A stretch of DNA of 63,884 bases, counting the filler, from Olpidium bornovanus S191 (lineage: Eukaryota > Fungi > Olpidiomycota), in NCBI GenBank assembly GCA_017911155.1. It is 28 parts of 28 records of this genome, joined end to end, with 100 filler letters (N's around TTAATTAATTAA, not from the genome) between each part and the next. Parts side by side here need not be neighbours in the genome. Positions count along the whole stretch, not along the records: positions 42,292 to 44,688 come from JAEFCI010005563.1; positions 44,789 to 45,839 come from JAEFCI010010369.1; positions 45,940 to 47,201 come from JAEFCI010001230.1; 25 more parts are not named here. One strand, given 5' to 3'. Shown in pieces: positions 44,608 through 47,091 of the stretch; within the stretch, counting starts at the first letter, position 1; every line of letters starts with the position of its first letter. The notes under the pieces were generated by a model. It ran no database searches and was not told where the DNA came from. It saw only the letters and a program-made list of their open reading frames with translations. The position numbers and the translations under genes were made by a program.

Positions 44608-45228
44608 GTATGTCTGCGAGGCTGCCGGAGAGCTGTCGTGATTTGTTTATGTTTTGGGAGTTGCGCGCTTCGCATCGCTGACGTTTTCNNNNNNNNNNNN
44701 NNNNNNNNNNNNNNNNNNNNNNNNNNNNNNNNTTAATTAATTAANNNNNNNNNNNNNNNNNNNNNNNNNNNNNNNNNNNNNNNNNNNNTCGCCGAGAAGC
44801 AGCAAGGCGCGATGGGCGGCTGGCTGACGGCCGCAAACGGACGCTCCCCCCGGCTGAGCCGGGTGGGCCCGAGGGCCTGCGCAAGCGGCAGCGACTCGAG
44901 CCCCCGTAGTCTCCGGCCCTTCCCCTGACCCCGCCTCCTCTCTTCCTCGACCTTGTCCCCGTTATAGCCTCCGCCCTCCGCCCCCGTTCCCTCCACCCCC
45001 GCTACACCCCCCGCTCCAGTCCCCACCTGTTCCCGCCTCCCCCAGACCCTGCCCTCTCCAGAACCCGCCTTCTCCAGATCCCGCCTTCCTCCGCACGCGG
45101 GGCCTTCGGCCCCGCCAGATAATTACAGATACATGCGCGAGGGCCTCCGACCCTCGCTACAGATTGTACTAAGATAGCGCGCGCCGGGCGGCCTAACGGC
45201 CGCCGGCTCTTGGTAATAAAGCGAGTTC

Positions 45229-45248
45229 AACCCTAACCCTAACTCTAA
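45229..45248 (+). repeat. Telomere-type repeat AACCCTAACCCTAAC followed by a CTCTAA variant, at a GC-rich to AT-rich transition
   Basis: Direct reading; AATAAA lies at 45215-45220. Confidence 0.6.
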
Positions 45249-47091
45249 GCAATTAAAGTAGAGCCTATCGATACGTCAAGTAACACAGCTGACATTTTTA
45301 GAAAAGGTTTACCGAAACCTCGTTTTACCGGATGTGTTACTTCATTGGGTCTTACACCCATTACCACATAATTTTTTTCTTCAATTCGTTTATCTCGTTT
45401 AATTGCGATAAAAAATCTTCATTTACTTTCCTCTCTTATCATTCTGAGTTTTCATCGAGGAGGAGTGTTGAATTTCGCGTTGTTTTTCCTTCTTTGTCTT
45501 TACTCTTGTTTGAACCACAGGCGGTTAGTTAGAATCCCTTAATGTTTAACCTTCATCCCCTGGCTTATAACACGTATAACTCTCTCTGAATAAAACGCCC
45601 CACGGCGGGCGCAAAACCACAGAAAGAAAACGAACAAAATGAATGCTCCTTTCTGGTGTGCATCCACTGTATTACATCTAAAATTTTCATTTCTCACTTC
45701 ACGCACTTTTTTTGCATACATGTTTACCTCGCAAACAAAACCCGTTCTGATGCGTTGCCTGTCGGTTCTCTCTGTGCCAGGATATTCTGATGCGTTGCCT
45801 GTCGGTTCTCTCTGTGCCAGGATAATCGACTCCGGAAAANNNNNNNNNNNNNNNNNNNNNNNNNNNNNNNNNNNNNNNNNNNNTTAATTAATTAANNNNN
45901 NNNNNNNNNNNNNNNNNNNNNNNNNNNNNNNNNNNNNNNTTATTTCCCGCCTTTTTTTTTTGTCCTTCCCCGCCCTTCGTTCCCGTTCCGCCGCCCCCGC
46001 GTTCCAAAAAAAAAAAAAAAAAAAAAAAAAGAAAAATAGACGGGCCTGGGTGGGGAAAGAGAGAGGGAGAGAGAGGGAGAGAGAGAGAAAGAGAAAGAGA
46101 GAGTGAGAGAGAGAAAGAGCAAATAACAATAAATTTTTTTCCTTCTTCCACTTTATAAAACTGCTGCCCTCTTTGCCACACCACGCTTTCTTTCTTTCGC
46201 TTCCCACACACGCACACACACCCCTTCCCCCCCCCCTTTTTTCCACTTTTTCTCTCCCTCGCACCTTTTTCCCCCCCCCTTGCGTTCGAAAATCATCCCT
46301 GGCACGGCAGCAGGGAGGAGGAGGAGAGAGGGAAAAACAGTGGGGAGATGCGGCCCCCAAGCGGCGCGCGGGTGCGAGCGTGAGAGCATAGTGAGAGGGT
46401 GAAGAGAGAAAGAGAGATAGAGGGGCCAGAGAGATACGGAGAGGGCATGGGAGACCTAAGAGAGACAAGAGAGAGAAGGCGGGCAGAGAAGAAGAAAAAA
46501 ATTAAGGCGGGGCAAGCCCCGCGAGGGAAAAGTGGGGAGGAGAGAAAGGGGGAAAGGGGACAGGGTGGATATGGGAGGGGGGAGGACAAAGGGGGAAAAG
46601 GGGGCCCGGGGGGCCTGGCGGCGGCGGCGGCGGCGGCGGCAGGCCGACACCGGCCTGGGCCGACAGCGGACACGCAATGGCAGAGAGAGCGGGAGATTGA
46701 CAGAGAGGGAGAGAAGACGGAACGGACGGCGAAAGCGCAGACAGCTGAGCGGAGAAGCCAGAGCCACACAAAGATAGAGATATAGAGAGTAAAAGAGACA
46801 CGTACACCCGCGCGGCTTTCCCCCCCCCCCCCCCCCCCTCCCCGCCCCCCGCGTTTCCCTCCCTCCGCCCTGCGCAGAACGCGCCGGCTCCACGCCGGTC
46901 GTCTCACCTCCTGAAGCAGCCGAGCGCCCGGAAGACTTTTCCTTATATACTTCTTTTTTTTCTCTCTCTCTTTTTTCTTTCTTTTCCTTTTTGTTTTTTT
47001 TTTTTTTTTTTTGTTTCTCTCTCCCCTCGCCTCTTCGGCCCTTTCCTCGCTCGCTGCCGCTTTCTTCCCGTCGCGAAAGACAAGGCGAGAG

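What the first reader, a model, noticed from the sequence alone, without database searches (positions are those of the whole stretch)
45060..45420. Hairpin-rich non-coding segment around a telomerase-template-like sequence: candidate telomerase RNA core or telomere-targeting retroelement end
Three consecutive GC stems occur: GCGGGGCC-TTC-GGCCCCGC (45097-45115), GCGAGGG/CCCTCGC (45137-45157) and GCCG(G)GCGGCC-TAAC-GGCCGCCGGC (45183-45207). AATAAA and AACCCTAACCCTAAC (45229-45243) follow; the latter contains the vertebrate/fungal template CUAACCCUAAC. Downstream, a 10-bp stem AAGTAACACA/TGTGTTACTT (45278-45287 with 45333-45342) encloses a 6-bp hairpin and U-rich tracts, and an A-rich CGATAAAAAA (about 45406) could pair with loop TTTTACCG as a pseudoknot. 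Boundary helix, template and U/A pseudoknot is the telomerase RNA order, and to my knowledge these RNAs are largely unidentified in zoosporic fungi. The alternative is the 3' end of a telomere-associated retroelement (ORF ending about 44928, C-rich UTR, AATAAA, telomeric junction).
Basis: partly seen in the sequence, partly recalled or inferred. Interest (0 to 1): 0.72.

Follow-up and report, generated by a model that had tools for sequence, protein, structure and literature searches.

The report
Short internal telomere tract at a junction
A 20-base run of telomere repeat sits where a GC-rich, hairpin-bearing gene tail meets AT-rich non-coding DNA; this looks like an old chromosome end that had a mobile element or other DNA added to it, not a telomerase RNA gene, and nothing related was found to settle it.

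Summary
The three GC hairpins and the AACCCT run (3.3 units, 45229-45248) are well beyond chance. The proposed U/A pseudoknot is not: 43% of shuffles do as well.

The telomerase RNA reading fails the tests I could run. No Rfam family matches. No helix lies directly 5' of the "template" (12-21 nt gap). No helix encloses the template. The last repeat unit is degenerate, as at the inner edge of a real telomere tract.

GC content drops from 71% to 40% about 21 nt before the repeat. The left block has a possible ORF end, a 168-nt C-rich tail with no G3 runs, three hairpins and AATAAA 8 nt before the repeat. CCCTAA follows on the same strand.

This is the layout of retroelements attached to telomeres (Coprina/Athena, MoTeR/FoTeR): 3' end towards the centromere, then about 3-7 repeats. 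The hammerhead ribozyme expected of the Penelope-like kind is absent. No RT sequence, extra copy or relative was found anywhere.

The junction reading is therefore favoured (about 0.45) but rests on geometry alone. Telomerase RNA stays at about 0.05.

The parts
44791..44928 (+). Possible C-terminal end of a + strand reading frame, cut by the piece's left edge, with TGA stop at 44926-44928
   Evidence: GC by codon position is 0.65/0.74/0.85 in this frame. No ATG-started minus-strand ORF leaves the left edge. No homologue among 5.8 billion proteins and no Pfam match. Coding status is therefore weak.
44929..45096 (+). C-rich tail (58% C, 12% G) holding a 16-nt tandem repeat, CCCGCCTTCTCCAGAA x3.6, at 45032-45088
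   Evidence: There are 14 C3+ runs and 0 G3+ runs on the + strand, and two G-quadruplex motifs on the minus strand, the strand that carries TTAGGG.
45097..45115 (+). Hairpin 1: 8-bp perfect GC stem with a 3-nt loop
   Evidence: (I22)
45137..45157 (+). Hairpin 2: 7-bp stem. Its core GGGCCTCCGACCC resembles that of hairpin 1 (GGGCCTTCGGCCC)
   Evidence: (D11)
45167..45216 (+). Hairpin 3 (45183-45207: 10 bp with one bulged G, loop TAAC). The predicted fold extends it with a lower stem, UACUAAGA/UCUUGGUA
   Evidence: Metagenome matches to its 20-mer stop at the hairpin itself, so it is a generic GC hairpin and not a family marker.
45215..45220 (+). AATAAA, 8 nt before the telomere-like run
   Evidence: A second AATAAA lies at 45589, so this is only mild evidence for a transcript 3' end.
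45229..45248 (+). Telomere-type repeat (AACCCT) x3.3: two and a half perfect units, then a degenerate unit AACTCT on the right side. TTAGGG reads on the minus strand.
   Evidence: 0.00 expected by chance. Unpaired in all predicted folds.
45249..45406 (.). AT-rich segment bounded by a 9-bp inverted repeat, GCAATTAAA/TTTAATTGC. It holds the 10-bp stem 45278-45287/45333-45342 and the 6-bp hairpin 45305-45320.
   Evidence: I4, I13; z = -2.51
45249..45839 (.). AT-rich (40% GC) flank without a convincing reading frame; taken here as chromosome-internal DNA or the next element of an array

Best explanation
The AACCCT run is a short internal telomere tract, the stump of a former chromosome end. It sits between AT-rich proximal DNA on the right and a GC-rich distal block on the left that was added onto that end.

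The block reads on the + strand as the tail of a transcription unit: frame end, C-rich untranslated tail with a small tandem repeat, three stem-loops, AATAAA. It ends directly in CCCTAA repeats.

The most likely mechanism is the one described for telomere-attached retroelements. The element RNA ends in, or lands on, the complement of the telomere repeat. It pairs with the TTAGGG 3' overhang of a short or uncapped telomere. The element's reverse transcriptase extends the chromosome end by copying the RNA. This leaves the element with its 3' end towards the centromere and a few telomere repeats in between. The stem-loops would then be the 3' structure that the reverse transcriptase recognises.

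Shown here: the tract, its polarity, the degenerate inner unit, the composition step, the strand bias and the hairpins.

Inferred: that the left block is a retroelement, that it came by reverse transcription, and that the locus is near a chromosome end.
For: 1. The tract is real and short: 3.3 units with 0.00 expected by chance. The degenerate unit is on the right, as at the inner edge of a telomere.
2. The best GC change point is 45208, with 71% GC to the left and 40% to the right. The likelihood is nearly flat from 45203 to 45217, about 21 nt before the tract.
3. The left block is strongly C-rich on the strand that carries CCCTAA: 14 C3+ runs against 0 G3+ runs, with G4 motifs on the TTAGGG strand. 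Telomeric retrotransposons show the same strand bias (PMC5537684, PMC10088271).
4. The order frame end (TGA 44926-44928), tail, hairpins, AATAAA, repeat matches published cases. Coprina elements have ORFs pointing to the centromere, with telomere repeats between element and chromosome (PMC13159263). FoTeR 3' ends are followed by 3.0-7.0 TAACCC copies (PMC12857005). Athena elements carry short telomere stretches at the 3' end (PMC5537684).
5. The hairpin cluster is non-random.
6. Base rate: Pyricularia genomes hold about 10 internal tracts of three or more repeats and about 119 of two repeats, mostly read as telomere relics or element junctions, against one telomerase RNA gene (PMC8381367).
Against: - No reverse transcriptase sequence lies in the piece. 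The 39-45 residues before the stops have no homologue and no Pfam match.
- No second copy or relative of the left block turned up in viral, prokaryotic or metagenome collections, phage or plasmid records. Multicopy status is therefore untested.
- The hammerhead ribozyme that lies immediately upstream of the repeats in telomeric Penelope-like elements (PMC6431247, PMC8557442) is absent: no Rfam hit and no CUGANGA core on either strand.
- The linkers between the hairpins are AT-rich (26-40% GC), like the right flank, and a small GC hairpin also occurs on the right at 45595-45612. The two sides are therefore not cleanly different in style.
- Whether the host's telomere repeat is TTAGGG, and whether the locus is subterminal, is unknown.
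Confidence: 0.45

Rival explanations
1. An internalised telomere without a retroelement. A shortened or broken end kept a few repeats and was repaired by copying or capturing DNA from another subterminal region (break-induced replication or telomere capture). The GC-rich block would then be an ordinary gene tail that happens to be distal.
For: Same tract, polarity and composition step. This route is documented in Pyricularia TERT knock-outs and natural strains, where it leaves short interstitial tracts (PMC8381367). The lack of RT, hammerhead and extra copies is what this reading expects.
Against: Captured DNA should start at an arbitrary point. Here the block ends 8 nt after AATAAA and after a full tail with stem-loops, which looks like a defined transcript 3' end. 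The strand bias matching the telomere strand would be a coincidence.
Confidence: 0.17
2. An ordinary intergenic region. A GC-rich gene ends at 44928 and its 3' UTR ends near 45230. The short telomere-like motif is then a footprint of telomerase-mediated break repair, or a binding site for a TTAGGG-binding Myb-type factor acting as a regulatory element.
For: Codon-position GC periodicity and a stop codon suggest a normal gene end. The GC step could simply mark the end of the transcribed region. Two-repeat motifs are common inside fungal genomes, about 119 per genome (PMC8381367). That TTAGGG-type motifs serve as promoter elements in several fungi and plants is my own knowledge, not tested here.
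Against: Fifteen perfect bases plus a degenerate unit is longer than a usual factor site. No gene is visible in the 590 nt to the right. The motif's position exactly at the putative transcript end would be unexplained.
Confidence: 0.2
3. A telomerase RNA gene. The run 45229-45243 is the template, hairpin 3 is the boundary element, and the stems on the right form the pseudoknot core. The RNA could be processed from the 3' UTR of the upstream mRNA, as in Ustilago maydis.
For: - The template-like run is unpaired in all predicted folds.
- At least 900 nt lack a reading frame.
- The region folds better than shuffles, z = -2.5 to -4.
- A telomerase RNA cut from an mRNA 3' UTR has a precedent (PMC9564094).
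- Telomerase RNAs diverge too fast for Rfam to be a fair test in a new lineage.
Against: - No Rfam telomerase family matches at E up to 10.
- The nearest helix ends 12-21 nt before the run, whereas the fungal boundary helix is immediately upstream (PMC4993307).
- No helix encloses the template.
- The proposed pseudoknot is at chance level.
- The run is longer than known TTAGGG-type templates, which have 9-11 nt (9 nt in U. maydis, PMC9564094; 11 nt is the CUAACCCUAAC quoted in the finding). It also decays into a degenerate unit.
- The fold z-score is nearly the same on the opposite strand.
- The composition step lies next to the run.
- A perfect 40-nt tandem duplication lies downstream.
- The base rate is about 1 in 10-100 (PMC8381367).
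Confidence: 0.05
4. An assembly chimera: two unrelated sequences joined by the assembler through shared telomere repeat.
For: The piece is a short contig (1051 nt) with very different composition on its two sides, and it ends on the right in a perfect tandem repeat.
Against: This is inference. The perfect repeat is only 15 nt, shorter than the usual assembly word lengths (21 or more). Every such word across it therefore carries unique flank, and real reads must support the join. The left piece would also still need CCCTAA, not TTAGGG, at its right end.
Confidence: 0.05

Closest known systems
Endonuclease-deficient Penelope-like elements (Coprina in fungi and others, Athena/Terminons in bdelloid rotifers)
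   Same: The reading frame points away from the chromosome end. [quoted passage not shown] A structured 3' region lies just before the repeats (PMC13159263, PMC6431247, PMC8557442).
   Different: The hammerhead ribozyme fold that lies immediately upstream of the repeats in these elements is absent here; three simple consecutive hairpins stand in its place. No RT or thumb sequence is available in the piece.
Telomere-targeted non-LTR retrotransposons of fungi (MoTeR of Pyricularia, FoTeR of Fusarium)
   Same: The 3' end has no poly(A) and is followed directly by about 3-7 telomere repeat units (3.3 here). Small tandem repeats occur within the element. Relics keep variable short tracts at their 3' ends (PMC12857005, PMC8381367).
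   Different: No RT or restriction-like endonuclease ORF is visible, and there is no sequence similarity to test. GC content (about 70%) differs greatly from the flank. AATAAA is present.
Internalised telomere relics and interstitial telomere sequences at subtelomeric block borders (Pyricularia; yeast X-Y' junctions, from my own knowledge)
   Same: A short tract of the telomere repeat lies between two blocks of different origin, with the degenerate unit on the inner side.
   Different: Those junctions start at arbitrary points in the captured DNA. Here the distal block ends like a defined transcript 3' end.
Fungal and vertebrate telomerase RNA template/pseudoknot domain
   Same: An unpaired run complementary to TTAGGG repeats lies in non-coding, well-folding sequence, with a stable helix somewhere upstream.
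   Different: There is no template-adjacent boundary helix, no core-enclosing helix, no supported pseudoknot, no CR4/5-like element and no Rfam match. The run is 15-20 nt with a decaying unit, not a sharply bounded 9-11 nt template.

Membership tests
Telomerase RNA | Single-stranded template complementary to at least 1.5 telomere repeats | tested here: met
   AACCCTAACCCTAAC at 45229-45243 is unpaired in the predicted folds. This assumes the host telomere is TTAGGG, which could not be checked.
Telomerase RNA | Template boundary helix immediately 5' of the template (fungal, ciliate and flagellate type) | tested here: not met
   Hairpin 3 ends at 45207 and its predicted lower stem at 45216, which leaves 12-21 unpaired nt before the run. 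The criterion comes from PMC4993307. A vertebrate-type tether cannot be excluded.
Telomerase RNA | Core-enclosing helix and a pseudoknot with a U-rich/A-rich triple helix 3' of the template | tested here: not met
   No predicted helix joins the 5' and 3' sides of the run. The proposed TTTTACCG/CGATAAAA pairing gives 7 of 8 pairs, and 43% of shuffles match it.
Telomerase RNA | Distal CR4/5 or three-way junction with a P6.1 stem-loop | tested here: inconclusive
   No Rfam telomerase family matches at E up to 10. The piece ends 590 nt after the run, and there are no relatives for a comparative fold.
Telomerase RNA | Single-copy gene, transcribed, bound by TERT, conserved in related species | not testable with these tools
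   No source assembly, reads, transcript data or relatives were available.
EN-deficient Penelope-like elements (Coprina/Athena) | ORF with DKN motif, RT motifs 1-7 and thumb domain | not testable with these tools
   Only 39-45 codons precede the stop codons in the piece. They have no homologue and no Pfam match.
EN-deficient Penelope-like elements (Coprina/Athena) | [quoted passage not shown] | tested here: met
   The + strand frame end, tail and CCCTAA units lie on one strand, with the degenerate unit on the far side. Which side faces the centromere is inferred, not observed.
EN-deficient Penelope-like elements (Coprina/Athena) | Hammerhead ribozyme motif immediately upstream of the repeats or in the terminal repeats | tested here: not met
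   No hammerhead family matches at E up to 10, and there is no CUGANGA core on either strand of the piece.
EN-deficient Penelope-like elements (Coprina/Athena) | Several copies, at chromosome ends | not testable with these tools
   No other copy was found in any collection reachable here. The source genome is not among them.
Telomere-targeted non-LTR retrotransposons (MoTeR/FoTeR) | 3' end without poly(A), followed directly by a few telomere repeat units | tested here: met
   3.3 units directly follow ...AATAAAGCGAGTTC, with no A run. FoTeR shows 3.0-7.0 units (PMC12857005).
Telomere-targeted non-LTR retrotransposons (MoTeR/FoTeR) | RT plus restriction-like endonuclease ORF; telomere-like variant repeats at the 5' end | not testable with these tools
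   The element body and 5' end would lie outside the piece.

The most novel reading that the evidence does not exclude
The run at 45229-45243 is the template of a telomerase RNA from a lineage where none has been described. The RNA would be cut from the 3' UTR of the upstream mRNA, as in Ustilago maydis, with hairpin 3 acting as a tethered boundary element.
Probability: 0.05. Interest if true: 0.75.

Novelty: new member of a known kind. Interest (0 to 1): 0.3.

Why it matters
If the left block is a telomere-attached retroelement, it would be an unrelated new family: it has no detectable relatives and no hammerhead ribozyme. It would also add a case to the short list of elements that extend chromosome ends without an endonuclease, the group closest to the origin of telomerase. 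If it is only an internalised telomere stump, it is an ordinary mark of subtelomere turnover. Either way, the piece should not be used as a telomerase RNA candidate without transcript and copy-number data.

Tried and rejected
- Rfam, all families, both strands, E up to 10. The only hits were three sub-threshold ones (snR50, PtaRNA1, a CRISPR repeat). No telomerase RNA and no ribozyme.
- tRNA scan: none.
- BLAST of the whole piece against phage and plasmid records: none.
- Exact-pattern scans. Hairpin 3 in viral and prokaryotic genome collections: none. The element-telomere junction in metagenomes: none. The 40-nt repeat unit in viral contigs: none.
- A 20-mer of hairpin 3 in metagenomes gave 23 loci, and a hairpin 1/2 module pattern in prokaryotic genomes gave 18 loci. 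Local BLAST showed that every match stops at the 20-30 nt hairpin itself, so these are chance GC hairpins and not relatives.
- Exact look-up of four ORF products in public assemblies: none on record.
- Protein search with three frames of the left end joined by X spacers: no hit at E up to 10.
- Pfam on seven translations: none.
- RIP indices and CpG depletion, to explain the AT-rich side: neither is present.
- Bacterial promoter and terminator scan: at background level.
- Alignment of the three hairpin modules: only hairpins 1 and 2 share a core.
- I did not run the all-representatives HMMER job. A low-complexity query of 45 residues cannot reach significance there once the word-indexed search found nothing.
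- Herpesvirus terminal repeats, a Helitron 3' end and mitochondrial GC clusters were considered from memory and dropped for lack of any supporting feature.

Full report
**What is there.** The piece (44789-45839, 1051 nt) has two unlike halves.

The left 440 nt is 69-71% GC. It breaks down as follows:
- 44789-44928 shows codon-position GC periodicity. The + strand frame from 44791 has GC 0.65/0.74/0.85 by position and ends with TGA at 44926-44928. A second + frame ends with TAG at 44907-44909. No ATG-started minus-strand frame leaves the left edge.
- 44929-45096 is a C-rich tail (58% C, 12% G) with a 16-nt tandem repeat, x3.6, at 45032-45088. It has 14 C3+ runs and no G3+ run on the + strand, and two G-quadruplex motifs on the minus strand.
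- 45097-45228 holds three GC hairpins separated by AT-rich linkers of 26-40% GC, then AATAAA at 45215-45220.

Next comes (AACCCT) x3.3 at 45229-45248. It has two and a half perfect units and then a degenerate AACTCT.

The remaining 591 nt is 40% GC with no convincing reading frame. It contains:
- a small GC hairpin followed by a T run on the minus strand at 45595-45612;
- a perfect 40-nt tandem duplication at 45745-45824.

**Check of the observation.** All stated coordinates hold.
- The 15-mer has 0.00 expected matches in shuffles.
- The three perfect hairpins give four stem/loop hits, against 0.30 expected in shuffles; 0.6% of 500 dinucleotide shuffles reach four.
- The region folds better than shuffles: z = -3.99 on the + strand. 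It does so nearly as well on the minus strand (z = -3.41), as expected of simple hairpins, so the strand is not indicated.
- The proposed pseudoknot pairing has 7 of 8 pairs with a C.A mismatch and is at chance level; 43% of shuffles do as well.

**Telomerase RNA reading.** The template criterion is met, but the others I could test are not.
- No telomerase RNA family of Rfam matches, even at E up to 10. This is weak evidence in a new lineage.
- Fungal boundary helices lie immediately upstream of the template (PMC4993307). Here hairpin 3 ends 21 nt upstream, and its predicted lower stem ends 12 nt upstream.
- No predicted helix joins the two sides of the run to enclose a core.
- The run is longer than known TTAGGG-type templates, which have 9-11 nt: 9 nt (UAACCCUAA) in U. 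maydis (PMC9564094), and 11 nt for the CUAACCCUAAC quoted in the finding. It fades into a degenerate unit, as genomic telomere tracts do at their inner edge.
- A perfect 40-nt duplication downstream suggests unconstrained DNA.

Base rates also count against this reading. Eight Pyricularia genomes hold on average 119 internal two-repeat motifs and 10 tracts of three or more repeats (PMC8381367), against one telomerase RNA gene.

In fairness, an ORF followed by a telomerase RNA is not absurd. The Ustilago maydis RNA is cut from the 3' UTR of the Emi1 mRNA (PMC9564094). I keep this reading at about 0.05.

**Junction reading.** Four features fit a former chromosome end.
- The best GC change point is 45208, with the likelihood nearly flat from 45203 to 45217, about 21 nt left of the tract.
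- The C-rich strand of the left block is the strand that carries CCCTAA. Telomeric retrotransposons show this bias (PMC5537684; PMC10088271).
- The order frame end, tail, stem-loops, AATAAA, CCCTAA units, other DNA is the published geometry of telomere-attached retroelements:
  - Coprina elements point their ORFs to the centromere and have telomere repeats between element and chromosome (PMC13159263).
  - Athena and Terminons carry a short reverse-complement telomere stretch at the 3' end, which pairs with the G-rich overhang (PMC6431247; PMC8557442).
  - FoTeR 3' ends are followed by 3.0-7.0 TAACCC units (PMC12857005).
- The perfect repeat is only 15 nt, shorter than the usual assembly word sizes. 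By inference, real reads must support the join, so a chimera is unlikely.

**What weakens it.**
- I found no reverse transcriptase sequence, no second copy and no relative of any part of the piece. The searches covered phage and plasmid records, viral contigs, one genome per prokaryotic species, JGI metagenomes, 5.8 billion proteins and Pfam. The source genome is evidently not in the collections I could reach, so copy number stays untested.
- The hammerhead ribozyme that lies immediately upstream of the repeats in telomeric Penelope-like elements is absent. Membership in that family therefore fails a defining test. The MoTeR/FoTeR type needs no ribozyme but cannot be tested without the ORF.
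- The linkers between the hairpins are as AT-rich as the right flank. The boundary of the added block could therefore lie anywhere between 45097 and 45229.

**Other rivals.**
- Repair of a shortened end by capture of another subterminal block gives the same tract without any retroelement (PMC8381367). It explains the missing RT and ribozyme, but not why the block ends like a transcript 3' end.
- An ordinary gene tail followed by a short telomere-like motif (a repair footprint or a factor-binding site) is also possible.
- My weights are: retroelement-type junction 0.45, capture 0.17, ordinary intergenic motif 0.20, telomerase RNA 0.05, chimera 0.05. The remainder is unassigned.

**Verdict.** The telomerase RNA interpretation is not supported. 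The kind of feature is known; if the left block is an element, it is a new family member with no detectable relatives. Interest is modest (0.3). The decisive tests need the source assembly and reads, the telomere repeat, and transcript ends.

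Noticed in passing
window 45745-45824: A perfect tandem duplication of a 40-nt unit (TTCTGATGCGTTGCCTGTCGGTTCTCTCTGTGCCAGGATA) lies just before the right edge of the piece. It has no match in viral contigs. 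It could be a minisatellite that broke the assembly.
   Followed up: partly
window 45032-45088: A 16-nt tandem repeat, CCCGCCTTCTCCAGAA x3.6 at 80% match, lies inside the C-rich tail. Looser copies of a 23-nt C-rich motif also occur at 44918 and 45036-45090 (D1).
   Followed up: no
window 44981-45054, minus strand: Two canonical G-quadruplex motifs lie on the strand that carries TTAGGG. The + strand of 44929-45096 has 14 C3+ runs and no G3+ run.
   Followed up: partly
window 45595-45617, minus strand: A GC hairpin (GCGCCCGCCGTGGGGCG) followed by TTTTATT looks like an intrinsic terminator. The count of such sites is at background level: 2 found against 1.1 expected. It shows that isolated GC hairpins also occur in the AT-rich half.
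   Followed up: no
window 45249-45406: A 9-bp perfect inverted repeat, GCAATTAAA/TTTAATTGC (14 nt at 86%), bounds a 158-nt segment that starts directly after the telomere-like run (I4). It could be a small inverted-repeat element or a structured RNA domain. No target-site duplication is evident.
   Followed up: partly
window 45097-45157: Hairpins 1 and 2 share a core (GGGCCTTCGGCCC and GGGCCTCCGACCC). Hairpin 2 has one extra A.T pair, added on both arms, which keeps the stem intact (D11, 58). This hints at duplication with the pairing preserved.
   Followed up: partly
window 45382-45446, minus strand: A weak match to the C/D-box snoRNA family snR50: 20.5 bits against a gathering score of 45, E = 2.6. 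The C box reads UGAUAA and no D box is visible, so I take it as chance.
   Followed up: partly
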